Shown one piece after another: positions 36,384 through 53,438 of a stretch of 64,000 nt of DNA. How positions within the stretch are numbered: position 1 is the stretch's first letter; every line of letters starts with the position of its first letter. This DNA comes from Phaeosaccion multiseriatum (taxonomy: Eukaryota; Protista; Ochrophyta, other classes), in the NCBI GenBank assembly GCA_965112735.1, contig OZ218965.1:2356001-2420000 (forward strand), in the 5' to 3' direction. Both the position numbers and the translations under genes were made by a program. The notes below the pieces were generated by a model, which saw only the letters and a program-made list of their open reading frames with translations, made no database searches and had not been told where the DNA came from.

Positions 36384-36583
36384 TGTAAAAGCGACCTAAG
36401 CCGCTTAGACAAGTGGTAACCCTTGATATATTATACGGGATGGAACCCGTTTGCAAGCCCTGCTGCTAGGCTCTCCTTATACCAAGATCACCGTTCTGAC
36501 ATCCTCCTCCACTCAGAATCTACGTAATATAGGACACACCGACCATTGACTTATGGTCCTTCTCGCTCTGAGGCCTTCCAACA
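36384..36583 (-). repeat. 3' LTR of element A
   Basis: Direct repeat of 53439-53631 (2 substitutions, 1 indel); adjacent purine tract on the minus strand. Confidence 0.92.
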
Positions 36584-36659
36584 TCCCCAATGCCTATCCC
36601 GTAACCTTCCAACATCCCCAATGCCTATCCCGTCTCTGCGACCACCACCACCGCAAGGT

Positions 36660-38202
36660 CTAGAACCCCAAATGTTGCGCCGTCTCCGCAGCGATGCCCA
36701 TCCCCCACTTCTCGTGCAACATGGCGCGCACGGTGCGCTCTCGTTTAGACCGCTGCCCACGCTTGCGCTGCACGCTCGGGTCCAACGCCCCTGGCGCCAA
36801 AGAGTCCTCGAATGCCTCTATTGCCGCCCTCTCCCCGCGCCGCAAGAGCCAATCGTCCCACTCCCACGTCTGATAACTGCCACCCTCCCGTACAGCCCAA
36901 CGGACACAGTACTCACGCCGTAGGGGCTGCCCTGTGGCCTTACGCCACCTCATCTTCACTATCCGCGCCAGGTTGGGCGCCCGCCCTATCCCAACCTCGT
37001 CATCGGTCACGCTACGCTTCTCCTGCAGTGCACTAGTACCCCAGTGGGCTGAGCAGTACCGGATGTGGTATCGAGCGAACCCATCTGGTAGTCCTTCCGG
37101 TTGGCCACTCACCCCATCAACGAACGGCTTGGTGAGGTCCCTATGGTACGCCCCTTGCTTGAACTCCACTCCCCCGCCTCTGACCCTCGGCACATCCAGA
37201 TACACCGTGCTACGGCGCATCACCGCGTAGTGCTCGTCGTTGAGTATGCCACCATGTCGCGCCTGGAAGGCCTGCTGTGTGGGCCAAGCCAGGACTTGGA
37301 ACGGTCCGTCCCAAGCATGACTCAGCGCCTTGAGCGTCAGTGCCTTCTGCTCCTCCATGGCCTCACCCTCCTCCTGCGCCGCCCCCCCTGGACGGTACAA
37401 CCACACCTTAGTGCCAGGAGGCATCGGCGCTGGCCAGCGACGCTCACGGTTCTTGAGCTGTAGCCTGCTGCGATACTCCTCGCGCCTGCCCGTCACCACC
37501 TGCGCCGCCGCTGCCATCCGCGCCCTCAGCTCGTGCACCCATGCCGAAGGCGTCTCGAACGAGCCGTCCTCCTCGAGGGCAGGCAGCATCGCTTGAAGTG
37601 GAATCGGGGGGTGTCGACCGAAGAGAGTGTAGTACGGGGAGAGGCCTGTGGTCTTGTGAGCTCTGCAGTTGTACGCGTACGTGAGCGCGGGAACATACTC
37701 AGGCCACTGCTGCATCTGGGCCTCCACTGTCGTCGCCAGCATGTCCTTCATCGTGGCCATGAAGCGCTCCACTTGCCCATTGGCTTGCTGATGCATCGGC
37801 GTAGTGAAGACTTGTGATGTCTGGAGTACGCGCAGCACATCGGCCATGAGCGTGCTCGTGAACTGCGACCCTTGGTCACTGACCAGCACCTTGGGCGCCC
37901 CCAGCACCGTCACTACGTGCCGCACGAATGCCCGAGCAATGCCCTCCGCTGTATAGTCCTTGGCGCACAATGGTACCACCACTGTCCATTTGGTGAACCA
38001 ATCTTGAAACACCAAAATGTACTCCTCCCCCCCCATGGCCATGGGGAAAGGTCCTGCCACGTCAGCACCCATAACCGCCCATGGCCCATTCACAGCCGCC
38101 GGTGATATGGACGAGAGCGGAACCTGTGGAGGCCGCCTCCGTGGTGTCTTGCGTGTCTGGCACGCAAGACATGAACGGGCCCAGTACAGCGCATGCCCGT
38201 TC
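36660..38202 (-). pseudogene. Element A integrase core, GPF motif and chromodomain (3' half of the split pol)
   Basis: GADVAGP, LVSDQGSQF, NGQVERF (DDE); WDGPF; IVKMR..EYCVRW..TWE. Continues the 51009-53438 frame when the insert is removed. Confidence 0.9.
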
Positions 38203-38515
38203 TGTTAGAAGTCGTGCTTTTGCTAGACTGGTACCTACCCTCTGAATTCAGACCGGGAGGTACCAGTCTAGCAAAAGCACGACTTCTAACAAGCCCTAAT
38301 GCTAGAAGTCGAACCCCCCCCCCCCCACCGCACATAGTGGAGAGAAGTAACTCGCAGTCTGGGAATCAGACTAATGGGTGCCAGCCGGTACCAGTTTTCG
38401 CCGAAAAACACACTTTTTTCACAAGCTACAGCCAGGATTCGAACTCGCAATGGCCTTGTTAGAAGTCGTGCTTTTGCTAGACTGGTACCTACCCTCTGAA
38501 TTCAGACCGGGAGGT
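38203..38515. mobile_element. Mini-element with palindromic terminal repeats: 89-bp palindrome (38203-38291), 165-bp spacer, second truncated copy (38457-38515)
   Basis: 34-bp perfect inverted arms tgttagaagtcgtgcttttgctagactggtacct around a tctgaattcaga centre; direct repeat of the unit at 38457. Confidence 0.88.
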
Positions 38516-38519
38516 TAGG

Positions 38520-38715
38520 TGTCGAAACTACCGACAGCTAGCCTCAAAGCCAAGCTAGAGCAGAGCAGGAGCTGAAGCAAGCACCCGGAAGCCAGCCCAC
38601 ACGCAGGCTGCGCTTCCTTCCTTTTATTACTGATTTACCGTCTAGTTGGCCCGTTTTCCGGCCGTTACACTACTGATTGGGTCCCCAAGGGACCCCAACT
38701 AGGCCACTTCTAACA
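38520..38715 (-). repeat. 3' LTR of element B
   Basis: Identical to 50813-51008. Confidence 0.96.
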
Positions 38716-38753
38716 TCCCCCTCACTACACCCCCGCCTCTTCCGCCAGCTCCC

Positions 38754-41700
38754 TCAGAAGCCGAGATGCGAGCGATAGAATTGCGTCTCGTGCGCCAGCC
38801 CGCTGCCCCACTTCTCATGTTGCCGCAGACGGATCGTGCTTTCCCGTTTAGACCTATGCCCTCTTTTGACATTCACTCCTGGATCAAGGGCAGTGTGCGG
38901 GAGGGCGTTCTCGAACGCCTCTATGGCCTTGGCGTGTCCCCGCTCCAGTAACCACTCAGCCCATTCCCAGGTCTGGAAAGTGCCGCCGTCCGACACCGCC
39001 CACCGCACGTTATACTCTCGCCGCAGTGGCAGCCCCGTGGCTTTGCGCCAGCGGAACTTCACAATCCTCGCCAGCGTGGGCACTTTCCCTTCACTCACCT
39101 CGTCCAGCTCTAAGCTACGCTGCTCCTGCATTGCGCTGGTAGCCCACTGAGGAGAGCACCAACGGATATGATACCTGGCGAACCCTTCCGGGAGACCGAA
39201 GGGCCGCTCGCTCACCCCATCGATGAACGGCTTCGTCAAGTCTCTGTGGTACGCCCGTTGCAGCTGCTCCACACCATTGCCGCGCACCCGTTTCATAGAC
39301 AGATACACTGCGCTGCGCTGCATGACCTGATAGTGCTCTTCACTCACCCGCCCATGCTGAGCACAGTAGGCCCCCAGAGCTGGCCAAGGCAAGACTGTAT
39401 AAGGACCATCCCACGAGTGCTGCAGAGCCTTGAGTTGCGCTGACGGGGGCCCTTCGAGTTCTTCCCCTTCTTGCTGGGCGGCGGCACCAGGACGATACAA
39501 CATCACCTTGGTTCCGGGTCGCAGGGGCGTCGGCCAACGGCGTGAGGCGTTCTTCAGCTGCAATCTCCCGTGGTAGTCGCAGCGCCTCCCATTGACCACC
39601 GCCGCAGCCGCAGCCAGACGTGCCCGCAGTTCGTGGACCCATGCCGAGGCAGACGAAAACGACCCGTCCTCCACTAGCGCCGGAAGCATCGCCTGTAGAG
39701 GCACCGGGGGGTGCCGACCGAACAAGGCGTAGAATGGCGCCATCCCCGTGCTCTCCTGCGAGCGGCAGTTGTACGCATAGGTGAGCCCGGCGACGTAATC
39801 TGGCCACTGCTGCATCTGTGACTCCACGGTCGTCGCCAACATGTCCTTGATCGTGGCCATGAAGCGCTCCACCTGCCCATTGGCCTGTTGGTGCATCGGC
39901 GTCGTGAACACTTGCGACGCCGATAGAACTCGCATCACATCGCCCATGAGCGCACTGGTGAACTGCGAGCCTTGATCACTCACCAGCACTCGGGGCACAC
40001 CCAGGGTGGTGACGACATGCCGCACGAAGGCCCGAGCAATACCTTCCGCCGTATAGTCCTGTGCCCTCAAAGGCACCACCACTGTCCACTTCGTGAACCA
40101 ATCCTGAAACACCAAGAGGTACTCCTCACCGCCCATGCCCATAGGAAAGGGGCCAGCCACATCAGCGCCCATGACCGCCCAAGGTCCATCCACCTTGGAA
40201 ATGGACGACAGCGGCACAGGCTTTGGCTGCCGGCGAGGAGTCTTGCGTGTCTGGCACGCCAGACAGGAGCGGGCCCAATACAGCGCATGTGCATTCATCT
40301 TCTCCCACCATACGCGCTCTTGCAGCGCGTCTAGCATACGTCCCGGGCCTTGGTGCCCACCTGCGATGGCATCGGTGTGGGCGGCATGCAGCAAGGCTGG
40401 CCGCATCTCCTTGGGCACACATACTTGTAGCCGAGTGTGCCGCACCCGCCACCGAAAGCCCCCAGGAGCCCACTTACGCATCAAGAGCCCGTCCTCATCC
40501 ACAAAGAACTCACCCCCACCTGCATCCACCACGCCGCCGGTGGGCCCAGCCTGAACACGGCGACGGAGTGCTTCCAGCTCCGCATCAGCCCGCTGCGCAC
40601 GCACCCACCACGCGGCCTCGACATGCAGACTGCCACCCAAAGCTCCAGCCGCTCGTCTGTGCGCCGCGGCAGCAGGCACCGTGCCTGGTAGAGACCACCC
40701 AAACTGTCGCTCTGCCTCTCGTCGATGCCCATCAAGCTCGCGCTGCAAGGTGGACTCCTGCTCCACCGGCTCCTTGGAAACTGAATCCACTGCCTCCTCA
40801 GCTTCATTATCCACTGCATCCGCAGCTTCATCACCTGCATCCCCCGCTTCTTCCGTGACCAGTAGATCTGCCGTACCAGGCTCCGACGGCGACTCCGCAG
40901 CAGGCGGCTCCCCAGGGTGGGTGATGCGGCCCTCCTCCGTAACAAGCTCCTCACCCTCGGTGGCACCAGCAACAGCAGCTGGACACACCTCCGAGGGCAG
41001 ACGAGACGCATCCTCCTCAAGCTCGGCCTCCCATGCAGCCCACGCATGAGCGGCCGCGGCACCCGTTTGCTGAGCCTCCGCTGGTGTGCACATCGAGAAG
41101 TAGTCACGCGACACCTGACGGACTTGCTTCCATGGCAACTCGATCATGGTATCTAGATGACTGGCCAACGCGCCCACCACCTTCCGCTGGCGCTTATATG
41201 TCCGCGTGAACCGCTCCACCATCTGCATCATTGTCTCCCACGAGCACTGCAGTTTGAATTGCAGTTTGGCCAGGTCGAATACCTCCAACGTCTTGGAGTG
41301 GACACCAAAGATGTAGAGCGGTGACACGTGGTCGCGATCGCCCCAATAACCAACCGCGGCCTGCATGAACCTGCCGACTTGCATCTCCTCCTGCTCCGCA
41401 GGGGTGTGAGCAGGGCTCATCGCGCTAAGCTCCACCCCCGGGCCACCATGGACGAACGGCACACACTCCGCCATGCGAGGCCAGAGGCGGAGGAGCGCCG
41501 CAGCGTCAGCAAACGCGTACTCCCGTTGAGCGGCGGACAGCGGCCGCTTCGTCCAATCGGTGGCCCGCTCCTCCTTGCTAAGGTGTTGCTCCAAAAACAT
41601 GCTGACAAGGTCCTGGAGTCCGATGAACTGAGTATGTTCGGGGCACACGCGCTTAAAGAGGTCACTGGTGTCCACCAAGTTGACGATGTGCTGGACATGC

Positions 41701-44700
41701 TCCGCGAGCTCCGGCCATCGGCCCAGGGCACGTTGGTCGTGACTCCAGTGGTGAGCCAGCTTCACAATCGAGGGTTCGGCCCACAGGTCCCGCAACACTT
41801 GCGCCAGTACCATCATACCCCCCGCCTTCTGAAGCGCGTCTAGATCAATCAAGAGCCCATAGTCACGCGCCACATCCGGCAGCGGCCCAACCTGCACGGC
41901 CAATTGCAGCAGCGACGCGCGCCGTCGGTGACGCGCCCACTCCGAATCCATAGCGACCACTTTGGCTGAGCGCAACTGAGTCGATAGAGCCTGCACGTGC
42001 CTCGGCGTAGACACGTACGTGCACCTCGCTGCGGAAATGTGACTCACAAATGGCGGCATCTGACCCGGCTGCCAGGCCTCTATCACAGCCTTCTTCACAC
42101 CCAGCTGAGGTGCTCGCGTAGGCTGCCATCCACATTGCTGAAGACGCTGTGTCCAAGCACGCCGAGCAGTACCCCTGCGTGACTGCGTCGCCGCCAAGTC
42201 CACCTCTGCAGTCTGCCAGGCTTGTAGGGCCTCCGCTCCGCTCTGCTGCTGGTGGTGGCACCGTTGCTGCTGTTGCTGGGCCGTCACGGCAGGCACAGGA
42301 ATAGGAAGGCGTGTGTCGGCTTCGCCCTGCAGCTGTTGCGCCACTGCGAGAAAGCGAAGCAGTGCGCCCTCCGTGGGCTCCTCCCAATGAAGGCTGCACT
42401 CGTCCCCTACCATCTCCACCAGGTTCAACTGCACCCCCATCGAAGCACACCAGGTGTGCAAGGGCGACGGCCACTCGCACGCAACCATGGCCAAGTCTAC
42501 CCCCGCATGCGTCTCCCACTCCTGCACCGGAAGCGCGTTGCGAGAGAGGCAGTCAGGCACCACCATTTGCTTCCCGGGACGATGCACAAACTGCAAGTGG
42601 TGCGTAGAGAGCCGCTCGTACCATCTGAACAGCTTGGAATTGGTATCCTTGTGCCCAGCCAACCACAACAAGGGCTGATGGTCCGTCACCACTGTGGTGG
42701 GGTAGTGGCAGATGTACATGGCCAGTTTGCGCACACACCACACCACTGCCAGCAGCTCCAGCTCCGTGCTGCTCAGTCGCGCCTCCGTCTCCGTGGTAGC
42801 CCGACTGATGAACGTCACCACACGCTCCTCCCCGGTCGCATCTTTCTGAGAGAGCACTCCTGCTAACCCTTCCGTCGAGGCATCGGTACTCAGGGTGAAA
42901 GTCGTCGCTGGCCCGTACTCCGGAAAAGCCAGTGCAGGGGAAGACAACAAGTCGGCAACGAGTCCATCCCAAGCTGCATCGTGCGAGGCATTCCAGGCGG
43001 TGCTCACGTCGACGCCCTTACGCAGCAGCCCATTGAGGGGCCGCACTTTGCGCGCAAACTCCGGAATGAAACGGCGAAAGTAGCTGAGCATGCCAATGAA
43101 ACGCCGCACCTGCTTAACTCGATTGACGCCGCCATCCTTCGCAAGCAACCTCAACGGCTTGACCAGCTCTTGCACCGCCGCATGCTTGGCCGGGTCTGTG
43201 CGCACCCCATTCTGATCCAGCAAATGCCCGCAGAACCGCACCTCCGGTGCACCCAATACAGCCTTACTCGGCTCCAACTTGAGCTTGTGCTCCACCAACC
43301 GCGCAAGCACAGCATCCAAATGCTCCAGATGCTGCTCAACCGTAGCCGAAAACACAGCAATATCGTCCACAAAGCATGCCACATGCTCCTGAAGCCCCTT
43401 GAGCACCTTGTTCATAAGCCGCACAAAGACTGCAGGCGCATTCTTCGCGCCCTGCGGCATCACTCGCCAAGCGTAAGTTCCACTGTGGCACACAAAGGTG
43501 GATATGTCCTCTTCCGCTGCTGATGCCATCGGCACATTGAAGTAGCCCGACATGATGTCCATCACCGAGAACACCTTGGAGCCATGCATCTCTGCCAGCA
43601 GATCATCAATCACCGGCATCGCAGGGGCCTCCGTGCGACACGCATCATTCAGCTGAGACAAGTCACACGTCATACGTACCACAGGCGTCCCATCCTCATG
43701 ACACTTGGTTTTGCCAGCTGCGTCCGTCTTCAAGACCGCCATCAGCGGAGTAGCCCAGCTGGAAGTGCTGGGGCGAATGATGGCAGCCGCGAGAAGCTTG
43801 TCAATCTCAATCTCAATCCCCCGCCGCAAATGTGGAGGATACCGTCGAGCGGAGCTCCGAATGGGCTGCTGATTCGCATCCTTCAGTCCCCACTCAAAGA
43901 AGAGAGTATCCGTCCGACCGTAGTCACCAGGCCTCTGACAGAATGCTTGCGACCGAGCGCGAAGGATCGCCACCAGTCCCCAGCGTTGCACCTCCGTCCA
44001 GGCACCGTCGCCAATCGTGATAGCGTGCAGGGGCGACGGTAGCTCCCTGAGCCAGAACTGAGCCCGCTCCGTAGTGAGCTTGGCACGGCGCCGCTGCTCC
44101 ACCACAAGCTCTCCTGCATCCCACGACTCCACTCCACCACCAAGACAGCGACTCTCCTGCAGCACCGTTCGCAATTGGATAAGGAGCAGCAGCGCATTGG
44201 TCATATCCTGCTCCACCTTCTCCTGCTGCTGTAATGGGCGACTAGACCACAACGACAAGAGCTGTTGGGCCCATGCGGCCACAGCAACGTCCCCAACGCC
44301 GCTCAGACCCGTGCCAGCGGCTTGGTGTACATGGGGGCGCAGGAGCAGTAGCGCGGTCACAGCCCCTTCCTCTGCCGCAACCAAGCACTCGCGCAGACGT
44401 CCATACACTCGCTCTGACAGGTGAGGGTACCACTCCTTGATCAACTGCACTCCTGCCATCAGAGTCCCACCGGACGTGTCACTCTGGCTACCGAGTCGCA
44501 AGGCACCATCCGCATCCAGTACCCACCCATCACCGCGTAGGTCAGTCAATGATGTGCCCACCGCCGCCGACGATGAACCTGCCTCGGACCGTAGTGGCGG
44601 TTCCTCCGACGCCACTGACGATGCCGCCCCTGGCGCAGGCCTGCTGGTGGAATCATCAGCCCCCGCCACGTGGTGGACCTGCAGCTGGCCTGTACGAGGC

Positions 44701-46700
44701 GGTCGGGGCTCCTGCAACTGTGTCTGACGGCGTCGCGCTACCGCCGCCGGAGCCACCTGCTGCTGTACCGCATTGGACCGCTGAACCTGCTGAGCTGCCG
44801 ACGAATCCGCTCGCTTAAAGAGCTCTTCCCGCTGGGCCTTGTGCCGTCGCTGCAATGCCCACTGGCGTTGCTGCCGTGCCTGCTGCTGTGCCGCTTGTAA
44901 CCGCTTGGCCTGCTGCGTTGCCAACCATGCTGCTGTCTCCTCCTTCGAGTCCACTCGTGGTGTGTCAGCTCGTCTGGCCGGCACTCGCACTATCCCCCCC
45001 CAGGAGGGCGCCAAGGGCACGCGACGCTCCCGCGGCACCTGTCGTTGCCCCAAGTCGCTCCCCCAAGCGAGACGAAGCCCTCGGTGATGCCAGGCGCAGG
45101 AGCCGTCAGCGCACAGCTCCCGTCGCAGCGGCAAAACTTGTCGTCGCACTTGCTCATGGCGCTCCAACACTGCTTGCCGATGAACCTGGTCCCACAGCAC
45201 AGGAGACTCCACAAGCATTGATGCCACTCTCCGACGTTGCCGCTGCAACCGCCCAGCACCCACTCGACTCTGACGACACTGACTCCCCTTCTTGCCGCTG
45301 CGCTGCAAATGCTGAAACCGGGCCTTCACTGCCGGCTGAGGCACCAGAGTCGATGGCACCCCCACCTCAGTCCGTGGGTGCGTCAGGGCCTGCACCTGCA
45401 CAGCTTGCAGCGGAAGCGCCGTAGCCCCCAGCTCAGCCTCCTCTGGTACCACCGAGCAGCGAACTACAGGCCCCTGCGGTGGGCACCAGACCGGCTCAGC
45501 TCCTGCTTCAGCTTCAGCCGGCTGCTGCGACGCCTCCTCCTCCACCACAGACTCAACCGCCTCCCGCGCCTTGGACCATGGCAGCCTGCGCTTCACCACA
45601 CGCCTCACCATCCCGCCAAGAGCACCAAGCCAGGAGGAAGGGGCCGCTGCAGTCTCCGGCATGGTATCTGAAGAAGCCGGCTCAGCGAGCATGAGCGCGG
45701 CCACCTCAGCGCTCGCCTCCGAGTCGAGCAAGCAAGAAGCGGTGCCGATGACCTGCCCAGGAACGACCACAATGACCTGATTGTGGTGATTCTGCACTGT
45801 GATTCGGTAACTCTGCCCCCCAGCATACACACCATCTTTGTGCGCCACTAGAACCTGCTCGTGCTCCAGCCACCATAGAACGTCCGCCTCTGCCGCCAAG
45901 TGTCCGTGAGCGCCCAGCTCCACCACCGCCTGGACACCCTCAACGATACCCGTAAGCTCGAGGAGAAGGGACCCCGTCTGTCCAGGTCCCAAGCTCAAAG
46001 CCTCCACCGCACGTACCCCCCCAACAGCAGCGTTGCCGTCCACCACTGCCAGCACTTGCACAGCCAAGGCATCGGACGGACGAGCATCCGACGTGGCCTC
46101 CTCCGAAGGAGTCGGAAGTACGTAGAGCTGCTTCGCACGATGATCGACGACTGCCCCTACTTGGGTGAAGAAATCCTGCCCCAAGAAGATGGGCCGCGCC
46201 AAGTGGTCCACCACATGAAAGGGTAGCACCGGCTGGCACGTCGGCGTGAGTCCCACCTGAAGCCAAACAAGCCCTCTGGACATGGTCTTGGCACGATTGT
46301 CAGCGTAAGACACCTGCACCCCCTTCTGCGTGGCGAGCTCTGACCGCTCCACCGTGCCATCCGCCACCAGTTGATTGAAGCAGGCTGTCGAGATGCAGCC
46401 CGCTCCTGTGCACCCACTGTCCATCAAGGCTGTAAAGGCGCTCTTCTCCACGGCGTCGGCGGCACTGGCATCCCGTGGAGCGGTAGCAGCCAAGCAATGC
46501 CGAGCGTCACTGACCTTCACTGGCGAGCGCACCGTAACCTCGATCGTGTGGCCCCGCCCTGCTGGGACTGCCGTACGACCCGTGGCAGCCACCGCTTCGG
46601 CAATCTCAGCTCTCCGCACTGCTGTCTGCAAGGCGGCCACCCCCCCGGAGCGTCCTCCATCCGCACACGGTAGAGAGCCAAGGCAGCGCGTTGCACACAC
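38754..46700 (-). CDS. pol: Pol polyprotein: aspartic protease, dUTPase-like segment, long spacer, RT, RNase H, DEDDy 3'-5' exonuclease, unknown domain, integrase, chromodomain
   Basis: LMDSGC; MDIMSGYFNV, MPQGAKNAP, FVDD; STDAS, ELELLA, TDHQPL, PDCLSR; AMDSEW..HDQRAL..YAFAD; H-H-C-C, D-D-E, GPY; EYNVRW..TWE. Confidence 0.95.
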   Translation of the reverse strand: MCATRCLGSLPCADGGRSGGVAALQTAVRRAEIAEAVAATGRTAVPAGRGHTIEVTVRSPVKVSDARHCLAATAPRDASAADAVEKSAFTALMDSGCTGAGCISTACFNQLVADGTVERSELATQKGVQVSYADNRAKTMSRGLVWLQVGLTPTCQPVLPFHVVDHLARPIFLGQDFFTQVGAVVDHRAKQLYVLPTPSEEATSDARPSDALAVQVLAVVDGNAAVGGVRAVEALSLGPGQTGSLLLELTGIVEGVQAVVELGAHGHLAAEADVLWWLEHEQVLVAHKDGVYAGGQSYRITVQNHHNQVIVVVPGQVIGTASCLLDSEASAEVAALMLAEPASSDTMPETAAAPSSWLGALGGMVRRVVKRRLPWSKAREAVESVVEEEASQQPAEAEAGAEPVWCPPQGPVVRCSVVPEEAELGATALPLQAVQVQALTHPRTEVGVPSTLVPQPAVKARFQHLQRSGKKGSQCRQSRVGAGRLQRQRRRVASMLVESPVLWDQVHRQAVLERHEQVRRQVLPLRRELCADGSCAWHHRGLRLAWGSDLGQRQVPRERRVPLAPSWGGIVRVPARRADTPRVDSKEETAAWLATQQAKRLQAAQQQARQQRQWALQRRHKAQREELFKRADSSAAQQVQRSNAVQQQVAPAAVARRRQTQLQEPRPPRTGQLQVHHVAGADDSTSRPAPGAASSVASEEPPLRSEAGSSSAAVGTSLTDLRGDGWVLDADGALRLGSQSDTSGGTLMAGVQLIKEWYPHLSERVYGRLRECLVAAEEGAVTALLLLRPHVHQAAGTGLSGVGDVAVAAWAQQLLSLWSSRPLQQQEKVEQDMTNALLLLIQLRTVLQESRCLGGGVESWDAGELVVEQRRRAKLTTERAQFWLRELPSPLHAITIGDGAWTEVQRWGLVAILRARSQAFCQRPGDYGRTDTLFFEWGLKDANQQPIRSSARRYPPHLRRGIEIEIDKLLAAAIIRPSTSSWATPLMAVLKTDAAGKTKCHEDGTPVVRMTCDLSQLNDACRTEAPAMPVIDDLLAEMHGSKVFSVMDIMSGYFNVPMASAAEEDISTFVCHSGTYAWRVMPQGAKNAPAVFVRLMNKVLKGLQEHVACFVDDIAVFSATVEQHLEHLDAVLARLVEHKLKLEPSKAVLGAPEVRFCGHLLDQNGVRTDPAKHAAVQELVKPLRLLAKDGGVNRVKQVRRFIGMLSYFRRFIPEFARKVRPLNGLLRKGVDVSTAWNASHDAAWDGLVADLLSSPALAFPEYGPATTFTLSTDASTEGLAGVLSQKDATGEERVVTFISRATTETEARLSSTELELLAVVWCVRKLAMYICHYPTTVVTDHQPLLWLAGHKDTNSKLFRWYERLSTHHLQFVHRPGKQMVVPDCLSRNALPVQEWETHAGVDLAMVACEWPSPLHTWCASMGVQLNLVEMVGDECSLHWEEPTEGALLRFLAVAQQLQGEADTRLPIPVPAVTAQQQQQRCHHQQQSGAEALQAWQTAEVDLAATQSRRGTARRAWTQRLQQCGWQPTRAPQLGVKKAVIEAWQPGQMPPFVSHISAARCTYVSTPRHVQALSTQLRSAKVVAMDSEWARHRRRASLLQLAVQVGPLPDVARDYGLLIDLDALQKAGGMMVLAQVLRDLWAEPSIVKLAHHWSHDQRALGRWPELAEHVQHIVNLVDTSDLFKRVCPEHTQFIGLQDLVSMFLEQHLSKEERATDWTKRPLSAAQREYAFADAAALLRLWPRMAECVPFVHGGPGVELSAMSPAHTPAEQEEMQVGRFMQAAVGYWGDRDHVSPLYIFGVHSKTLEVFDLAKLQFKLQCSWETMMQMVERFTRTYKRQRKVVGALASHLDTMIELPWKQVRQVSRDYFSMCTPAEAQQTGAAAAHAWAAWEAELEEDASRLPSEVCPAAVAGATEGEELVTEEGRITHPGEPPAAESPSEPGTADLLVTEEAGDAGDEAADAVDNEAEEAVDSVSKEPVEQESTLQRELDGHRREAERQFGWSLPGTVPAAAAHRRAAGALGGSLHVEAAWWVRAQRADAELEALRRRVQAGPTGGVVDAGGGEFFVDEDGLLMRKWAPGGFRWRVRHTRLQVCVPKEMRPALLHAAHTDAIAGGHQGPGRMLDALQERVWWEKMNAHALYWARSCLACQTRKTPRRQPKPVPLSSISKVDGPWAVMGADVAGPFPMGMGGEEYLLVFQDWFTKWTVVVPLRAQDYTAEGIARAFVRHVVTTLGVPRVLVSDQGSQFTSALMGDVMRVLSASQVFTTPMHQQANGQVERFMATIKDMLATTVESQMQQWPDYVAGLTYAYNCRSQESTGMAPFYALFGRHPPVPLQAMLPALVEDGSFSSASAWVHELRARLAAAAAVVNGRRCDYHGRLQLKNASRRWPTPLRPGTKVMLYRPGAAAQQEGEELEGPPSAQLKALQHSWDGPYTVLPWPALGAYCAQHGRVSEEHYQVMQRSAVYLSMKRVRGNGVEQLQRAYHRDLTKPFIDGVSERPFGLPEGFARYHIRWCSPQWATSAMQEQRSLELDEVSEGKVPTLARIVKFRWRKATGLPLRREYNVRWAVSDGGTFQTWEWAEWLLERGHAKAIEAFENALPHTALDPGVNVKRGHRSKRESTIRLRQHEKWGSGLAHETQFYRSHLGF

Positions 46701-47774
46701 CCCTCACACATATCACACTCACTGTCAACAGCCGACGCACAGGCACAAGCTCCCGGACTGGGGGGCTCCTTGAGCAGAGCGACTCCCGCGCCAGGCTCCA
46801 AGGCTACTGCATGACAAGCACGCACAAACGGATCAAGGGCAAGCGTGTGCAGCCCCGCCTCCTCCGTCAACACCGCCGTGAAAGCAGCCTCCTGCTGATG
46901 CTGCTGTGCTGCTGCTGTCGCACGAGCACGCTGCCTCCGCTGCTTCCTCCGTACCCGCCGTCGAAGAGCTACTGCGCGCCTCGCTGCATCCTGCTGCTCC
47001 TGTGCCGCCTGCTCGTCACCCTTGCGCAGCGCTGCCTTCGCCTGCTGGGCACGCCGTCTCAACCACTTTGCTGCCACCCTCTGCTCAGTCCTGCTCCGCC
47101 CCTCCGCCGGAGGCACCGCTGGAGACGTCAGCGGCAGGGTCCGAAGGCTCTGCTCCTGCTGCTGAAGCTGAACCTCCTCCTGCTGCTGAAGCTGAACCTG
47201 CCACGCCCACTGTTCATGTTCCCCCGTGGGAGTGAATGGCGGAAGAGATGCTGCCCCGAGCGGTAAGGCCCGCACGAGGCCCATGGCCTTGGCCTGGCGA
47301 GGCGTCACCAGGGAGCACAGCTGCTGAGGCTGAAGCTCATCGCTTGACGGTGGGCTGGCTTTTGCAACCTGGACGGCAGCCTCGACAGCATGACCCTGCT
47401 GCTGCTCCAATTGCTCCTGCTGCCCCCCCGCCACCTGCGGCTGCTGCTGCAGCAGCTGCTGCTGCTGTCCCAGCCGCTGTTGCCGCTCCTTCGCCGCACG
47501 CAGTGCGCGCTGTTCCGGGAAGGCACACGCACGCACCCGCTCCAAACCCCTTGCATCCATCCAGACAGACTCGTGTTGCGCAACGGTTGCCGCCTCGCAC
47601 TCAACCTCCCCCACTGCCGACGGTGGCACCTGCTGCTCCGGACACTCACCCGCAACGACTGCATCCTCCTGGCGCAGAGGCAGCGGCAGCGCGACGTCAG
47701 GTCCGCTCGACGGCTCGACGGCAGAGCCGGGCTGCGGTGCTTCGACTAAGCACACGGAGCGTACCACTGGACAC

Positions 47775-47807
<33 letters not shown>

Positions 47808-48448
47808 GGCGGCGGCAGCTGCTCGACTGCGGAAGCCGCTGGCGCAGCCTCCTGGTGCGCGCCCTCCACGACTACCTCTACTGCACGCTGCGCCTGCTGC
47901 TGTACCGCCGTCATCGTCGTGTGCTCACCAGCAACGACTGCATCCGGGCCGTCAGTGCCCCGCGACTGCTCGACCACAGAGCGTACCACAGGACCCGGCT
48001 GCTGGCGCTGCGGCTGCGGCAGCTGCCGCTCCGACGCTGGCAGCTGCTCGACCGCGGACGGCGCAGGCACAGCCTCTCTGTGCGCACCCTCCACGACTGC
48101 CTCTACGACACGGCGCTGCTGCTGCTGCTGCTGCTGCTGCAGCTGCTGCTGCTGTTGCTGTTGCCGTTGTAGCCGAGCACGTTTGAGTCTGTCGCCACAC
48201 CACATGTCACTCCGATAAACTCTGATGGCAGGTGACTCCTGCTCTACACGACTAGCCTGACCGCTCCTACGCTGAGCGTCGGCATGGGGCAAAGGTGGGT
48301 CTGACAAACAAGATAGGTGCGAAGTACATTCATTATCTTCTACACTGCTCTTGCCCGCCCTCCCCCCCTGTTCCCCCACGCCGACGCTATCCTCACGCGC
48401 GGCGGTCGTGGTCCCCAGGGCTGCTGGCCAAGCAGCCCCGGGGCACCG
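46517..48448 (-). CDS. Q/E-rich intermediate ORF of element B, in frame with gag behind a single UGA
   Basis: No stop between 48448 and 46517; repeated AVEAVVEGAH.EA.PA.SAVEQLP modules. Confidence 0.6.
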
Positions 48449-48749
48449 TCAGCCTTCGAACTTGAACCCGTCCTGCGCCGCCAGAGTGCCCGCCACCATT
48501 GCTGCTACGGCTTCAGACATGTCGGACTCCTGGTGCTGCGCTCTGACCGCCTGCCGCCGCTGCACGCGACTCACAATGCCGAGCAGCTCCTCACGCGTAG
48601 CGGGGATGGCGTTGCATTCTATCCATCCATGGCCGGCGCGGCGACAAGTCATGCAGTTAAATGGGGCATTGCCGTTGCCACGCTGCTTCACCGAGCCGTG
48701 GAACAGCAAGGGCCGCTGCTGGGTGGGCGTGAGCCGCGGCTGCTGCGCC

Positions 48750-48784
<35 letters not shown>

Positions 48785-50670
48785 TGCATTCACCCCCACC
48801 TCCTGTGACGGCTGATGGTCCAGATGCTGCTCCACCGAATTCACGGCCACTTCCAGATGCTGCTCCACCGCATTCACGGCCACTCCCCCGCGCGGAGTGC
48901 GCAGACCACCACCACCACCACCACGGGCCCGCGTAGCCCCACCAGTAGAAGAGAGCGTAAGTGGGCTACCAGCCTGGAGCACCCGAGTCGCGGAAGGAAA
49001 TGCCTTCTGGAAGGCGGCGTAGAAATCACTCCACGAGGGAGTCGCCGACTCCCAGCGCAGCCAGAAGTTGGTCATGCCGTCAGTTAATGGCAACGAGCCG
49101 TGACGAAGCCGAATCTCGACCTCTGGCCGCAGCACCGCCAGCAGGCCCGTAACCAAGGCTTGCTCATCCGTGGCCTGCCCCGTCACCTGCGCCAGACACA
49201 GAGAGAGTTCCGCCAGCTTGGTGAGCAGCCTGGCGAGCGCCTGGTTCACCTCGGCAGGAACGGTGGACGCTTCCAGAGGCTTGGCCTCCCGCACCAACGT
49301 CTGGACAAGCTGCTGGAGGCCGTCTCGCGCAACAGGAACGCCGAAGAGACGCAACAGACACCTCGCGAGCAATTGGAACTGTGCACTCTCCGTCTCCCAC
49401 TCCAATGTGACGTGCTGGTCGCCCTCCATCCACGACGCACCCTTCTGAGCCTCCGCCAGGACAGTGGCCCGATCCACTGCACCCAAGTCGGCCAGCACTC
49501 GCTGCTCCATCACCCGCCCTTGGCCCGGAAGCACGGACCCAGTAGAAGTCAAGATCTCCTGTCCTTGCAGAATGCTCACCCAGTTGTACATGCGTGCGAG
49601 CACCACAGCACGAGGATGAGGCTGTCCAGCCGCATCGAATAGAGAGGGAAGTTTCTGCTCCTGGAGCACACGGATAGCACCCACGGGCAGCGTGATCGTC
49701 TGCACCGTATGACGGGCGGGCGCCTGCAGCACATCCAGGGCCTGCTGCCGTGCCCGCTCCCGCTCCCGTTCCATGTCCCGCTGTAGCATATCCTTAACCT
49801 GCTGCTGCAGCACCTCTACCCCCCCGGTGCGGCATCCTTAACCTGCTGGAGCTGCGCCGCTAACAGCTCCCGCTGCAACGTCTCCACCTCCAACTGGGCA
49901 GCACCCTCAGGCGGCCGCTTCGGCGGCGGCTGCGCCGCCATCTGTCGCTGCAGCTCCGCCGCCACCTGCTGCTGCAGCTCCACCGCAAACTTCCGCTGCT
50001 GCTCCGCCCCCCGCGAGAGCCGCAGCACCTCCAGTTCCCGCTGGAGGGCCGCCGTCTCCGCCTTGCTCTCCCGCAGTTGGGCCGCCATGAGCTGCGCAGC
50101 TTGGTGCTGCGTCAGCATCTCAAGCCCCTCCTGGAGAACCCGCGTGTCCTCCTGCTCCGGTGTCTTCTCTCCCTCCGCTGGCTGATCCACCACCCGAGCC
50201 CCGCCAGACGCACCAACAAGAGGGACCAAGGGCGTGCCAACCACATCCCACACCGTGCTCTCCTCCTGGCCCACCGACTCTGCATCCCCCGAGTCCTCCT
50301 GGCCCACCGACTCTGCATCCCCCGAGTGGAAGGAAACCTCCGACGCCGCCACCGTCAGCGGCCTCACCCCAGCAGCAGGAGGGGAAGCGGCAGCAGCCGT
50401 AATCGCAGACCCCTCAAAAAAAGAGGGCGACTCCAGGGACTCCTCCCCCCGACGCAACGCCGCCCGCACACGGTCCACAGCCCCAGGGCTGGCAGTGACC
50501 TCCGCAGGAGGAGCAGCAGCTTCCGATACCACAGACCCCACGTCCGCAGCACCACCATCAGCTCCACCGCCCTCAGCGTCACTCGTAGCGCCCTCCGCCG
50601 ATGAAAGACTCAGGAAGTCCCCCTCCTCAGCCCTGGCCACCCTAGCAGCGTGGAACCGCAGGAAGTCCAT
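48449..50670 (-). CDS. gag: Gag of element B, two segments separated by a frame break at the G7 run (49819-49825)
   Basis: ATG 50670; coiled-coil N-terminal part; zinc knuckle CMTCRRAGHGWIEC (CX2CX4HX4C). Confidence 0.8.
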
Positions 50671-50803
50671 CCCCGCCTCAGCCAGTGCCACCCTAGCAAG
50701 CCCAAAGCTGTCTACGGCCTAAAGCTGGGCAGCTGGAAGCAAAGCTCAAGCCAACACAATAAATCAGCCTCAAAGCTGGATCTCAGACCTGTGTCTTTCG
50801 GGT

Positions 50804-50812
50804 CTTCCGGGT
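50804..50812 (-). promoter_or_regulatory. Putative self-priming primer-binding site (ACCCGGAAG)
   Basis: Immediately follows the 5' LTR; complementary to LTR 50876-50884; lacks the TGG of a tRNA PBS. Confidence 0.7.
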
Positions 50813-51008
50813 TGTCGAAACTACCGACAGCTAGCCTCAAAGCCAAGCTAGAGCAGAGCAGGAGCTGAAGCAAGCACCCGGAAGCCAGCCCACACGCAGG
50901 CTGCGCTTCCTTCCTTTTATTACTGATTTACCGTCTAGTTGGCCCGTTTTCCGGCCGTTACACTACTGATTGGGTCCCCAAGGGACCCCAACTAGGCCAC
51001 TTCTAACA
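50813..51008 (-). repeat. 5' LTR of element B
   Basis: Identical to 38520-38715; TAATAAAA at 50915-50922. Confidence 0.96.
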
Positions 51009-53438
51009 GTTCATGGAGGGCCACCACACTCGCTCCTGCAGCGCATCCAGCATCCGCCCTGGCCCGTGATGGCCGCCTGAGACCGCATCGCCGTGCGTGG
51101 CATGCAGCAGGGCCGGCCTGAGCGCCTTGGGGACGCAGAGCTGCAACCTCGTTCGCTCTACCCGCCACCGTCGCCCCCCGGGGGCCCACTTGCGGCGAAG
51201 GACGCCATCGCCATCGAGAGAGAACTCCCCCCCGCCCGCATCGAACACCCCCTCGCCTGGGGAGGCTGCCAAGACCTTCTGACGCCACCCCTCCAACTCA
51301 GCGTCCTGCTGCTGCGCCTTCACCCACCACGCGGGCTGGTAAGTCCGAGCCCCATGCAATATGCGGGCTGCGCACGACTGCTCACCCACTGCCGGGGGAA
51401 CACCAGGGAGGGACCACCCAAATTGCCGCGTAGCAGCCTGCCTTGCGGCCTCCACGTCTGCCAGCGCTGCTGCCTCGCTCGCCGCAGCCGCATGGGCATC
51501 GGTGTCAGCCGCTAGAGTCGCTCCAGCCTCTCGTCCCTCCACCCCCGTGGCCGAGCCGCCAACTGTGAGTCCGCCGCCTCCTCCTCCTCCTCCTCCTCCG
51601 CCTCCTCCTCCTCCTCCTCCTCCTCCTCCTCCTCCTCCTCCTCCTCCTCCTCCTCCTCCTCCTCCTCCACCTCCGCCGCCGCCGCTGCCGCCGCCTTCAA
51701 CCCCTCCTCCGCCGCCTGCACCACCCGCACCGTCACCGCCGCCGGCTGTGGCGTCTGCTGGGGCCGCAGGCGGTGTGCGCTCCGCCTCCACCGTCGATGC
51801 ACCCACCACGCCCGCGGCCTCGACGGCGGCAGGGATGTCCCACGCCACACCTTGGGTTTGCCACTGCTGCTGGGCCTCTGTGGGGGTCACCATGGTGTAG
51901 TAGCCGCCCGTATCTGCGGCGATGGCACTCCACGTCTTCTCAATCATAACCGCTCGAGGTAGTGACAGCTTGCCACGCCTCCGCGCCGCGGCCGGCCGAT
52001 AGCGCGCCCTGAACTGCTCCACTGCGTCCATGAGCTCCGTCCAGGTCCACTGGGGATGTCGGTAAGAAAGAAGGATCAGGTCGATCATCTCCACTGACTT
52101 AGCGGTCGCTGAGAAAATGAAGAGCGGACTGGCGTGCTCCCGATCGGCCCAATACCCCACCCCGGCAGAGACGAACTGTCCTGCGCGCATCTCAGCACGC
52201 GTCACACCCGCCCCCCCGCTATCCACCGCGCTCACTTCCATCGCAGACGGCACCGGAACTGCACAAGCCCGCATCTTCGGCAACAACTGTAGTAATGCGG
52301 CCACATCGTCGAAGGCATAGCTGAGCTGGGCCGCAGTGAGCTCCCGCTGAGTCCAATCCGTCTTCTGCTCCTCCTTGCTCATAAAACGCTGCAGGAACAT
52401 ACTAACCAGGTCTGCTAAGCCAATGGGACGGCAGTGCTCAGGCCACACCTCCTTGAATAAATGCGTCGTGTCGACCAAGTTGGCGATGGTCCACACATGC
52501 GGCGCCAACGCCGGCCACTTCCCTAGGGCACGCTGGTCGTGACTCCAGTGATGCGCCAGCTTCATAATCCCCCCGTCGCCCCACAGCTCACTCAGCACCG
52601 CCGCCAGCGCCTCCATACCACCATTGCCACTCAAACTGTCCAAATCCACCCAGAACCCACAATCACGCTCCGAATTGGCGACGCCGCTATACTGAACACC
52701 CAACTGCAGCAGAGACGCCGGCCGAGGAGGAGTGCGTATAGCCCACTCCGAGTCCATGGCCACCACTGTCGCCTCCCGCAGTGCCGCTCGCATGTCCCAC
52801 ACCTGCTCCTCCGTGCGTATGTACGTGCACCGCGCTGCTGGCACGTGGCTGAGAAACAGCGGCAGCTGAGACCACTCCTCTATCACCCGTTTCTTCTCGT
52901 TGATGTGGGACAGGGTCACTGGAGCCCAGCCACATTGCCGCATCTGCTCCACGTGCTGCAGCCGAGCCGACCCGAAGCCGCCTGGCGCCTCGACCGCCAC
53001 ACTGTCCACGCACAGCGCCTCCAAACCTGCCGACGCCTGCTGTCTCGCCGTGACCGACGAGAGCCCCTCCATAGGCACTGACTGAGCCGCCACCGCCTCC
53101 CCTTGCAACTGCTGCGCCGCGGCAGCAAACCGCAGCACCGCACCTTCCACCGGATCCTCCCACCCTAACGCGAGGGTGTCACCCACCACATCCACCAACG
53201 CCACCTCCACTCCCACCGCATCACACCACTCAGTCACAGGCAAGGGGTCGCGTGACAAGCAGTCAGGCACCACAAGCTCCCGCCCCGGTTTGTGGACAAA
53301 CTTGAGATGATGAGCAGAGAGCCGTTCATACCACCGAAAGAGCTTGGAGTTGGTGTCCTTGTGTGTCGCCAGCCACAGCAATGGTTGGTGGTCCGTCACC
53401 ACCGTGCAGGGATGGTGGCAAATGTACATGCTCAACTT
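51009..53438 (-). pseudogene. Element A pol fragment: RNase H C-terminal half, DEDDy exonuclease, unknown domain, poly-Gly linker, integrase zinc-finger N-half
   Basis: TDHQPLLWL..PDCLSR; AMDSEW..HHWSHDQRAL..YAFDD; HATH..GGHHGPGRMLDALQERVWWPSMN. Confidence 0.9.

What the first reader, a model, noticed from the sequence alone, without database searches (positions are those of the whole stretch)
41480..42010. Gypsy Pol with an embedded MUT-7/WRN-type DEDDy 3'-5' exonuclease between RNase H and integrase
Seen: in-frame segment with ExoI (VVAMDSEW), SLLQLA, ExoII (KLAHHWSHDQRAL), LVDT, GLQDLVSMFL...SKEERATDWTKRPLSAAQREYAFAD (ExoIII YxxxD). All catalytic acids are present. The same domain, diverged but with intact motifs, sits at the same place in element A (about 52290-52810), so it is a lineage trait rather than a one-off capture. 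Known: this is the DnaQ-like RNase D/WRN/MUT-7 fold; DEDDy domains are reported in extra ORFs of bdelloid retroelements, but canonical gypsy Pol has nothing at this position. Inference: it could proofread an unusually long (12.5 kb) genome, trim the self-primer or cDNA ends, or counter small-RNA silencing (MUT-7 relatives act in RNAi).
Basis: partly seen in the sequence, partly recalled or inferred. Interest (0 to 1): 0.92.

Follow-up and report, generated by a model that had tools for sequence, protein, structure and literature searches.

The report
Gypsy retrotransposon with built-in 3'-5' exonuclease
A recently active 12.5-kb jumping gene at a chromosome end of a stramenopile protist carries a complete 3'-to-5' exonuclease inside its replication protein, between RNase H and integrase; selection has kept it in two sister families, and I found this layout in no searched database or paper.

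Summary
Window 41469-42017 (minus strand) encodes a Pfam DNA_pol_A_exo1 (PF01612) domain, E 1.2e-20. It lies in frame in a 2648-aa Pol, between RNase H and integrase. The host element is a 12,489-bp Ty3/gypsy element with identical 196-bp LTRs.

- **Active site:** all five DEDDy residues are present (D1585, E1587, D1655, Y1728, D1732).
- **Fold:** an AlphaFold model (pLDDT 92) matches the exonuclease domains of Nibbler/Mut-7, RNase D, Rrp6 and WRN.
- **Second family:** the element it sits in, "A", has the same domain (59% aa identity, 52269-52826).
- **Copies:** the genome holds about 20 B-type and 11 A-type copies. All 28 non-degraded copies keep DEDYD.
- **Selection:** dN/dS is about 0.2 in the exonuclease, against 0.05-0.08 in RT and IN.
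- **Origin:** no host paralog is similar.
- **Novelty:** none of 94 related gypsy polyproteins, and none of 66 of the best exonuclease homologs scanned with Pfam, combines RT or IN with PF01612. The closest precedent is a separate DEDDy ORF3 in bdelloid rotifer retroelements.

Function is inferred, not shown. The domain most likely trims 3' ends of the element's own replication intermediates. Both families look Tf1-like self-priming, and PBS and PPT abut the LTR ends. Proofreading and anti-silencing remain open. The label "MUT-7/WRN-type" is only loosely supported. This scan had already noted the same layout on other copies in this genome.

The parts
50813..51008 (-). Element B 5' LTR (196 bp, TG...CA)
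   Evidence: 100% identical to 38520-38715
50876..50884 (-). Putative self-primer segment within the 5' LTR (CTTCCGGGT), probably near the RNA 5' end
   Evidence: Exact reverse complement of the 9 nt that directly follow the LTR. Family A has a different but again complementary pair. The RNA fold pairs the two segments
50804..50812 (-). Primer-binding site (ACCCGGAAG) abutting the LTR end with no spacer
46517..50691 (-). Upstream gag-like ORFs (291, 454 and 620 aa). The last two share a frame and are separated by one stop. The last overlaps Pol in another frame. No Pfam match
38754..46700 (-). Pol open reading frame, 2648 aa: PR (DSG at aa 94), RT, RNase H, exonuclease, integrase
43224..43664 (-). 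Reverse transcriptase (RVT_1, aa 1013-1159)
   Evidence: E 1.9e-27
42606..42995 (-). RNase H (RT_RNaseH / RT_RNaseH_2, aa 1236-1365)
   Evidence: E 2.9e-28
41469..42017 (-). DEDDy 3'-5' exonuclease domain (PF01612, aa 1562-1744). Catalytic codons: D1585 41946-41948, E1587 41940-41942, D1655 41736-41738, Y1728 41517-41519, D1732 41505-41507
41090..41385 (-). Region of about 100 aa after the exonuclease, of unknown fold, followed by an acidic low-complexity linker
   Evidence: No Pfam match. AF2 pLDDT 56-76. No Atlas look-alike
40239..40418 (-). Integrase zinc-binding domain (Integrase_H2C2, aa 2095-2154)
39906..40166 (-). Integrase catalytic core (rve, aa 2179-2265)
38716..38746 (-). Polypurine tract abutting the 3' LTR
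   Evidence: Read directly from the sequence
38520..38715 (-). Element B 3' LTR
38203..38515 (-). 313-bp mini-element with palindromic ends, adjoining B. It lies inside the same 4-bp duplication (GAAC) as B
51009..53438 (-). Element A, 5' internal part: end of RNase H, exonuclease, start of integrase. The 5' LTR is joined directly to RNase H, an internal deletion
52269..52826 (-). Element A exonuclease domain (PF01612, E 2.2e-15, DEDYD intact, 59% aa identity to B)
36584..38198 (-). Element A, 3' internal part (rest of integrase and C-terminus), 73% nt identity to B 38907-40289
53439..53631 (-). Element A 5' LTR (193 of 200 bp kept)
   Evidence: 99% identical to 36391-36583
36384..36583 (-). 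Element A 3' LTR (200 bp). The 4-bp duplication ACTG lies in the flanking 42-bp satellite

Best explanation
SHOWN: 41469-42017 (minus strand) encodes a complete DEDDy-type 3'-5' exonuclease domain (PF01612; the RNase D / Rrp6 / Mut-7 / WRN fold). It is an in-frame part of the Pol polyprotein (PR, RT, RNase H, Exo, IN) of a 12,489-bp Ty3/gypsy LTR retrotransposon with identical LTRs. That element is nested in a diverged sister element with the same layout, in the subtelomere of a stramenopile chromosome. The domain is a trait of two sister families (about 20 and about 11 copies). It is under purifying selection and keeps all five catalytic residues in every non-degraded copy. It is not a recent capture of a gene of the present host.

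INFERRED: it is an active nuclease that enters the particle as part of Gag-Pol and works on 3' ends of the element's own replication intermediates. The likeliest jobs are two. One is cutting back single-stranded 3' tails on the fold-back RNA self-primer. The other is removing unpaired or non-templated nucleotides from cDNA 3' ends, so that they finish exactly at the TG...CA termini that integrase needs.

My confidence in the identity and selection part is about 0.95. My confidence in the mechanism is about 0.45.
For: - **Identity:** Pfam gives 74.4 bits, E 1.2e-20. The catalytic D, E, D, Y, D fall in invariant or near-invariant columns. The AF2 model has pLDDT 92 and pTM 0.88. Foldseek's best hits are Nibbler EXO (TM 0.73), RNase D, Rrp6 and WRN exo (TMt 0.81). 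PDB profile searches agree.
- **Lineage trait:** the own-genome search finds 46 matches in two families. All 28 non-degraded copies, plus one metagenomic relative, read DEDYD. Every full RT-bearing copy also carries the exonuclease.
- **Selection between A and B:** in the exonuclease pN is 0.29 and pS 0.68, so dN/dS is about 0.2 (P = 3e-9 against neutrality).
- **Selection within B subfamilies:** 16 S / 11 N and 20 S / 11 N differences, dN/dS 0.16-0.20 (P = 9e-5 and 2e-6).
- **Recent activity:** LTRs are identical in B (196/196) and in a full-length A copy (200/200, with target-site duplication ACGC).
- **Not from the present host:** host PF01612 genes exist, but none resembles the element's domain beyond the ExoIII motif.
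- **Self-priming:** in both families the bases right after the 5' LTR are complementary to an LTR segment about 70 nt upstream, and the sequences differ between families. B pairs CTTCCGGGT with ACCCGGAAG. A pairs AAACGGGT with ACCCGTTT. The predicted RNA folds close on that pairing. This is the Tf1/Tf2 mechanism (PMC5341516).
- **Blunt cDNA ends:** PBS and PPT abut the LTR ends with no spacer. A correct cDNA is therefore already blunt at TG...CA, and any extra 3' nucleotide would have to be removed. The RT of the self-priming element Tf1 is noted for strong template-independent addition (PMC3035444).
- **Position in Pol:** being inside Pol implies packaging with RT and IN. From established knowledge of lentiviral pol genes, the RNase H-integrase junction is where non-primate lentiviruses carry dUTPase, another accessory enzyme that acts on the cDNA.
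Against: No biochemical or expression data exist. The only public runs that hold the element are unlabelled contigs. Tf1 and Tf2 self-prime and integrate without any exonuclease, so the proposed jobs do not require one. The domain is flanked by long, poorly conserved linkers of about 200 and 350 aa (dN/dS 0.3-0.5), so it may be released as a free protein and act elsewhere. It evolves about four times faster at the protein level than RT, RNase H or IN (dN 0.37 against 0.09-0.14). That fits an accessory role and could also fit a host-directed one. Substrate type (RNA or DNA) cannot be read from the sequence.
Confidence: 0.5

Rival explanations
1. Counter-defence: the exonuclease degrades or trims host small RNAs, or double-stranded RNA derived from the element, and so blunts RNA silencing. 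This would parallel the roles of Mut-7, Nibbler and other DEDD nucleases in small-RNA pathways and the immune-evasion ExoN of arenaviruses.
For: The nearest cellular and structural relatives include Mut-7/Nibbler. The domain evolves faster than the core enzymes, as host-facing proteins often do. Long flexible linkers could allow release as a free protein. Rodriguez et al. also raise a silencing-related role for the rotifer DEDDy ORFs (PMC5408684).
Against: The domain sits inside Pol, which is normally made in small amounts and enclosed in particles, a poor place for a cytoplasmic suppressor. dN/dS of 0.16-0.2 shows purifying selection, and I found no sign of an arms race. Subfamily assignment to Mut-7 is not secure, and no Mut7-C domain is present. 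No small-RNA data are available.
Confidence: 0.2
2. True proofreading: the exonuclease removes misincorporated nucleotides from the growing cDNA 3' end. This would raise the fidelity of reverse transcription for an unusually long element, as ExoN does for nidovirus RNA replication.
For: PF01612 is the proofreading domain of family A DNA polymerases. It lies next to RT-RNase H in one polypeptide. The elements are long, 12.5-13.9 kb with a Pol of up to 3303 aa.
Against: The domain is separated from RNase H by about 200 poorly conserved residues. Longer LTR elements exist without any exonuclease (established knowledge). By sequence and structure its nearest relatives are stand-alone RNA- or DNA-end trimming enzymes, not polymerase-linked editing domains. 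No test of coupling to RT was possible.
Confidence: 0.12
3. Non-catalytic module: the fold is kept as an RNA- or DNA-binding or scaffolding domain, as in Maelstrom, EXD1 or Egalitarian, and does not cut.
For: Inactive DEDD-fold proteins are known in small-RNA and RNA-transport pathways (PMC5408684; Egalitarian among the fold matches).
Against: All five catalytic residues are invariant across the two families at 59% identity, the 41%-identical metagenomic relative, and all 28 non-degraded copies. Inactive relatives typically lose them.
Confidence: 0.08
4. Neutral passenger: a captured host fragment carried along without function.
For: Retrotransposons do pick up host sequence. Other accessory domains occur sporadically in related polyproteins.
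Against: Synonymous changes significantly exceed the neutral expectation, both within B and between A and B. The domain is retained in frame in two families that differ by 41% of its residues. No similar host gene exists.
Confidence: 0.03

Closest known systems
DEDDy ORF3 of bdelloid rotifer LTR retrotransposons (Juno, Vesta) and of Athena/Terminon elements (Rodriguez et al. 2017, PMC5408684; Arkhipova and Yushenova 2019, PMC6431247)
   Same: A reverse-transcribing element carries an RNase D-like DEDDy 3'-5' exonuclease as an accessory function. The function is unknown there too, and 3'-end processing of RNA or ssDNA was suggested. Terminons are also telomere-associated.
   Different: In rotifers it is a separate ORF3 downstream of pol, with the motif changed to DEED. 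Here it is fused in frame inside Pol between RNase H and integrase, with the full DEDDy set, in a stramenopile. No sequence relationship to the rotifer ORFs was tested.
dUTPase between RNase H and integrase in non-primate lentiviruses (established knowledge, not tested here)
   Same: An accessory enzyme is inserted at the same RNase H-integrase junction of Pol, is packaged with RT, and improves the quality of the cDNA.
   Different: It is a different fold and chemistry, acting on the nucleotide pool and not on nucleic-acid ends.
Tf1/Tf2 and other self-priming Ty3/gypsy elements (PMC5341516)
   Same: The PBS is complementary to the start of the element's own transcript, there is no tRNA primer, and the PBS lies directly at the LTR end.
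   Different: Tf1 and Tf2 have no exonuclease, and their RNase H is reported to release the primer. RT identity to anything in the protein database is at most 37%.
Cellular Mut-7 / Nibbler / EXD3, WRN exonuclease, RNase D, Rrp6
   Same: The same Pfam family, catalytic motifs and fold. 12 of the 66 best homologs carry Mut7-C, and named ones are 'exonuclease mut-7 homolog'.
   Different: Identity is only 25-36%. No Mut7-C, HRDC or helicase partner domain is present. The subfamily is not resolved.
Nidovirus nsp14 ExoN and arenavirus NP ExoN
   Same: A replicating RNA element that encodes its own DEDD-superfamily 3'-5' exonuclease, used for proofreading or immune evasion.
   Different: Those are DEDDh enzymes of RNA viruses with no reverse transcription. 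None appeared among the top 50 viral fold matches, which were all giant-virus or phage exonucleases.

Membership tests
DEDDy 3'-5' exonuclease (Pfam PF01612, DnaQ-like) | Profile match above the curated cut-off | tested here: met
   74.4 bits against a cut-off of 23.6 (B) and 57.4 bits (A)
DEDDy 3'-5' exonuclease (Pfam PF01612, DnaQ-like) | ExoI D-x-E, ExoII D and ExoIII Y-x3-D all present | tested here: met
   D1585, E1587, D1655, Y1728 and D1732 lie in invariant or near-invariant columns. DEDYD is present in all 28 non-degraded copies
DEDDy 3'-5' exonuclease (Pfam PF01612, DnaQ-like) | RNase H-like alpha/beta fold of the exonuclease type | tested here: met
   AF2 pLDDT 92. Foldseek probability 1.0 to Nibbler, RNase D, Rrp6 and WRN exo
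DEDDy 3'-5' exonuclease (Pfam PF01612, DnaQ-like) | Metal-dependent 3'-5' exonuclease activity | not testable with these tools
   Needs an enzyme assay
Mut-7 / EXD3 subfamily | C-terminal Mut7-C (PF01927) domain | tested here: not met
   No Pfam match downstream of the exonuclease, even at E up to 1
Mut-7 / EXD3 subfamily | Closest sequence relationship to Mut-7/Nibbler over other DEDDy groups | tested here: inconclusive
   With the element-only profile, diDNase scores 1.7e-9, Nibbler 3.9e-9 and Rrp6 1.2e-7. Nibbler is first only with a profile dominated by cellular sequences
RNase D / Rrp6 / WRN group | HRDC domain after the exonuclease | tested here: not met
   No PF00570 match. The region after the exonuclease is modelled at low confidence as a small alpha/beta unit
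Ty3/gypsy (Metaviridae) LTR retrotransposon | Domain order PR-RT-RNase H-IN, with the Integrase_H2C2 and rve type of integrase | tested here: met
   The nearest relatives are all gypsy polyproteins
Ty3/gypsy (Metaviridae) LTR retrotransposon | Direct LTRs ending TG...CA, a polypurine tract, and a primer-binding site next to the 5' LTR | tested here: met
   The PBS is of the self-priming kind, not complementary to a tRNA
Ty3/gypsy (Metaviridae) LTR retrotransposon | Short target-site duplication | tested here: inconclusive
   A has ACTG here and ACGC at C5. B alone has none. GAAC brackets B plus the mini-element
Bdelloid-type retroelement DEDDy ORF | Exonuclease encoded as a separate ORF3 after pol | tested here: not met
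   Here it is in frame inside Pol, with RNase H upstream and integrase downstream in one 2648-aa ORF

The most novel reading that the evidence does not exclude
These elements encode the first natural reverse-transcriptase polyprotein with a covalently linked editing 3'-5' exonuclease. On this reading the domain removes mismatched or non-templated nucleotides from the growing or finished cDNA, giving a retroelement a fidelity or end-polishing function that reverse transcriptases are thought to lack.
Probability: 0.12. Interest if true: 0.9.

Novelty: new variant of a known kind. Interest (0 to 1): 0.62.

Why it matters
Reverse transcriptases are the textbook polymerases without proofreading. 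Retroelements are thought to rely on RNase H and integrase alone for all nucleic-acid cutting. Here a third RNase H-superfamily nuclease is kept by selection inside Pol, in elements that have moved very recently. It offers a natural system to ask whether a retroelement can edit or polish its own primer or cDNA ends, or disarm small-RNA defence from within Pol. If the domain works with RT, it would also interest enzyme engineers who want a higher-fidelity RT. It extends the only earlier report of DEDDy nucleases in retroelements (separate ORFs in bdelloid rotifers) to another eukaryotic supergroup and to a fused architecture. That suggests repeated, independent recruitment of this enzyme by retroelements.

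Tried and rejected
- **Long relatives of the exonuclease:** a word-indexed search among proteins of 1456-4634 aa found no hit. This says little, because the index needs shared 5-mers.
- **Metagenome scan:** a scan with the A + B + P0001 alignment found only distant cellular-type matches at 29-43% identity.
- **Only close relative:** P0001 (41-47% identity) sits on a 917-bp contig (L011). Its frame is open to the 5' edge but shows no context.
- **Expression:** four runs from one sample hold the stretch. They are unlabelled and kept as contigs. They cover 40001-46000 without joints, so no splicing is seen, but they cannot show transcription. No verdict.
- **Complex prediction:** RT-RNase H against the exonuclease gave no answer, which is neither support nor evidence against.
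- **Region after the exonuclease and the linkers:** no Pfam match, no Atlas look-alike, low-confidence model.
- **Dating the acquisition:** the next RT lineages in this genome are only 37-38% identical. The two copies I examined are cut off at or soon after RNase H, so I cannot say whether the sister lineage lacks the domain.
- **Host donor:** about ten host PF01612 loci exist. None resembles the element's domain beyond the ExoIII motif. I rejected recent capture from this host.
- **Misread second RNase H:** I considered whether the domain is a misread second RNase H (aRNH) and rejected it. All profile and fold matches are to DEDDy exonucleases.
- **tRNA in the mini-element:** none found.
- **Telomere repeat:** I read the repeat at 55549-64000 only to place it.

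Full report
**Observation.** The plus-strand frame of 41480-42010 is full of stops. The minus strand carries one ORF, 38754-46700, of 2648 codons. Pfam finds these domains in this order:

| Domain | Residues | Score |
|---|---|---|
| RVT_1 | 1013-1159 | E 1.9e-27 |
| RT_RNaseH | 1265-1365 | E 2.9e-28 |
| DNA_pol_A_exo1 (PF01612) | 1562-1744 | 74.4 bits, cut-off 23.6, E 1.2e-20 |
| Integrase_H2C2 | 2095-2154 | E 1.4e-14 |
| rve | 2179-2265 | E 3.7e-06 |

A D-S-G protease motif lies at aa 94. The exonuclease therefore occupies window 41469-42017. This Pol has three RNase H-superfamily nucleases in a row: RNase H, exonuclease and integrase.

**The domain itself.** I aligned it with the second element's copy, one metagenomic relative and 57 cellular homologs. 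ExoI D and E, ExoIII Y and D are invariant, and ExoII D is nearly so. In Pol numbering these are D1585, E1587, D1655, Y1728 and D1732. AlphaFold2 on that alignment gives pLDDT 92 and pTM 0.88. Foldseek against the PDB puts Nibbler (Mut-7 homolog) EXO first (TM 0.73). RNase D, Rrp6, EXD2 and WRN exonuclease (TMt 0.81) follow. Sequence searches of the PDB agree.

The subfamily is not settled. A profile of the element's own three sequences scores a bacterial RNase D-like diDNase, Nibbler and Rrp6 about equally. No Mut7-C or HRDC domain follows. So "DEDDy, PF01612" is secure, and "MUT-7/WRN-type" is only a loose label.

**The elements.**
- **Element B** has LTRs at 38520-38715 and 50813-51008 that are 196/196 identical. 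They start TG and end CA and enclose 12,489 bp.
- **Element A** surrounds B, with LTRs at 36384-36583 and 53439-53631 (99% identical). The part of A on the 5' side of B ends in the zinc-binding domain of integrase. The part on the other side resumes three residues later.
- **A is internally deleted.** Its 5' LTR runs straight into RNase H. It still holds end of RNase H, then PF01612, then Integrase_H2C2.
- **Setting.** A is inserted, with a 4-bp duplication (ACTG), into a 42-bp satellite that adjoins about 8.4 kb of telomere repeat at the window's end.
- **Host.** A host gene in the window (MINDY deubiquitinase, 16531-17865) has its nearest named relatives in oomycetes and Tribonema, at no more than 44% identity. 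The host is probably a stramenopile with no close sequenced relative. This rests on one gene.

**A lineage trait under selection.** The 67-Mb assembly holds about 20 B-type copies (90-100% aa identity in the domain) and about 11 A-type copies (about 58%). I fetched 28 other copies. Together with the window's two, 28 of the 30 domains are not degraded, and all 28 read D-E-D-Y-D. Most B copies are open in one frame from RT to IN. Every full RT-bearing copy has the exonuclease. A full-length A copy on contig 5 is 13,299 bp, with 200/200 identical LTRs, duplication ACGC and a 3199-aa Pol.

Nei-Gojobori counts between A and B:

| Region | dN/dS | Note |
|---|---|---|
| Exonuclease | about 0.2 | pN 0.29, pS 0.68; dS is saturated, so the ratio is rough |
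| RT | 0.05 | |
| RNase H | 0.05 | |
| Integrase | 0.08 | |
| Flanking linkers | 0.3-0.5 | |

Between B subfamilies the exonuclease shows 16 synonymous and 11 non-synonymous differences, and 20 and 11. About 76% non-synonymous is expected under neutrality (P = 9e-5 and 2e-6). The domain is therefore constrained, though less tightly than the core enzymes.

**Origin and distribution elsewhere.** An exhaustive HMMER search of 1.84 billion representative proteins found 516 relatives. Only one is close: P0001, 186 aa, on a 917-bp metagenome contig. The rest are 25-36% identical. Of 66 of the best hits that I scanned, all have PF01612, 12 have Mut7-C, and none has an RT or integrase domain. Named ones are "exonuclease mut-7 homolog". 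Searching with the RT-RNase H part found 94 gypsy polyproteins, at no more than 37% identity. Some carry other accessory domains, but none has PF01612. A metagenome scan found nothing close. The 50 best fold matches among viral proteins are giant-virus and phage exonucleases, with no reverse-transcribing virus. The host has about ten PF01612 loci of its own, and none resembles the element's domain beyond the ExoIII motif. So the domain was acquired before A and B split, not from a gene that the present host still has in similar form.

**Literature.** DEDDy exonucleases are reported in retroelements only as separate ORFs. These are ORF3 of the bdelloid Juno and Vesta LTR elements (motif DEED) and ORFs of Athena/Terminon elements. 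Their function is unknown (PMC5408684, PMC6431247). A review cites this as a known accessory domain (PMC6338049). A survey of the RNase H-like superfamily describes only RNase H plus integrase as the Pol arrangement (PMC3985635). My further searches for an exonuclease inside a gypsy Pol, or a retrotransposon-encoded proofreading domain, found nothing. This holds for the library at hand, not for all literature or Repbase.

**How it may work.** Two features of the sequence bear on this. First, both families look self-priming in the Tf1/Tf2 manner (PMC5341516). The bases immediately after the 5' LTR are the exact complement of an LTR segment about 70 nt upstream, and the pair differs between families. 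B pairs CTTCCGGGT with ACCCGGAAG. A pairs AAACGGGT with ACCCGTTT. Predicted RNA folds close on this pairing (z about -2.4 each). Second, PBS and polypurine tract abut the LTR ends without spacer. A correct cDNA therefore ends exactly at TG...CA, and any extra 3' nucleotide must be removed before integration. The RT of the self-priming element Tf1 is known for strong non-templated addition (PMC3035444). The domain is also made as part of Pol and so would be packaged with RT and integrase.

Together these make 3'-end trimming of the element's own primer or cDNA the most economical reading. I give it about 0.45. True proofreading gets about 0.12. Counter-defence against small RNAs gets about 0.2. 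A non-catalytic role gets about 0.08, disfavoured by the invariant catalytic residues. A neutral passenger gets about 0.03, disfavoured by dN/dS. None of these was tested directly. The public runs are unlabelled contigs, and the complex prediction gave no answer.

**Verdict.** It is a new variant of a known kind: a known accessory enzyme of retroelements in a new, fused position and a new host group, with good evidence of selection and recent activity. This scan had already noted the same layout on other copies in this genome, and my tests agree with those notes.

Noticed in passing
38203-38515: A 313-bp mini-element with 89-bp near-palindromic ends that begin TGTTAGAAGT, like element B's LTR. 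It gives more than 200 matches across the genome, often in head-to-head or tandem groups. A contig of run X4 shows the same end joined inside another B copy at 45284. It is probably a non-autonomous element moved by this family's integrase.
   Followed up: partly
38199-51012: Element B alone has no target-site duplication. The 4-bp duplication GAAC (minus strand) brackets B, 4 bp and the mini-element as one unit. How this composite arose is unexplained.
   Followed up: partly
50804-50884; L002:9614-9707: Both families show a Tf1-like self-priming signature. The PBS directly after the 5' LTR is complementary to an LTR segment about 70 nt upstream, with compensating differences between families A and B, and a closed RNA fold is predicted.
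   Followed up: yes
48449-48451: Two gag-like ORFs share one frame and are separated by a single stop. The copy on contig 1 likewise has one in-frame stop in front of a 3274-aa ORF. This suggests gag-stop-pol readthrough in this family. In the window's copy the Pol frame is offset from the upstream ORF, whereas copies on contigs 1 and 5 are continuous.
   Followed up: partly
53632-55548 and about 35900-36383; telomere 55549-64000: A 42-bp satellite directly adjoins about 8.4 kb of telomere repeat. Element A is inserted in the satellite, so the satellite now flanks A on both sides. The telomere letters were not sent to any search tool.
   Followed up: partly
Whole genome (G000): contigs 5, 11, 13, 16 ends; contig 14 at 2.3-2.75 Mb: Copies are concentrated near chromosome ends. 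Of 20 separate loci, 6 lie within 30 kb of a contig end, where 2% is expected (P about 2e-6). A further cluster of nested copies lies on contig 14. Whether this reflects targeting or survival in gene-poor DNA is unknown.
   Followed up: partly
41090-41385: A region of about 100 aa after the exonuclease is shared by A and B at low identity. It has no Pfam or Atlas match and only a low-confidence small alpha/beta model. An acidic low-complexity linker follows it.
   Followed up: partly
Pol, aa 1000-2270 across B subfamilies (L016, L019, L027 against the window): Synonymous divergence between B subfamilies is mosaic along Pol: 0.22 in RNase H and the linker, 0.02-0.03 in the exonuclease, 0.10 in integrase. 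This indicates recombination between subfamilies.
   Followed up: no
16531-17865: A host MINDY-3/4 deubiquitinase exon. Its nearest named homologs are in oomycetes and Tribonema minus (no more than 44% identity), which points to a stramenopile host with no close sequenced relative.
   Followed up: partly
L046 (G000:C10:1-8300): About 8 kb of (CCTGG)n simple repeat lies at the start of contig 10. It has no stop codons and so creates a spurious 4622-aa open frame that runs into a truncated gypsy element whose RT is 37% identical to B's.
   Followed up: partly
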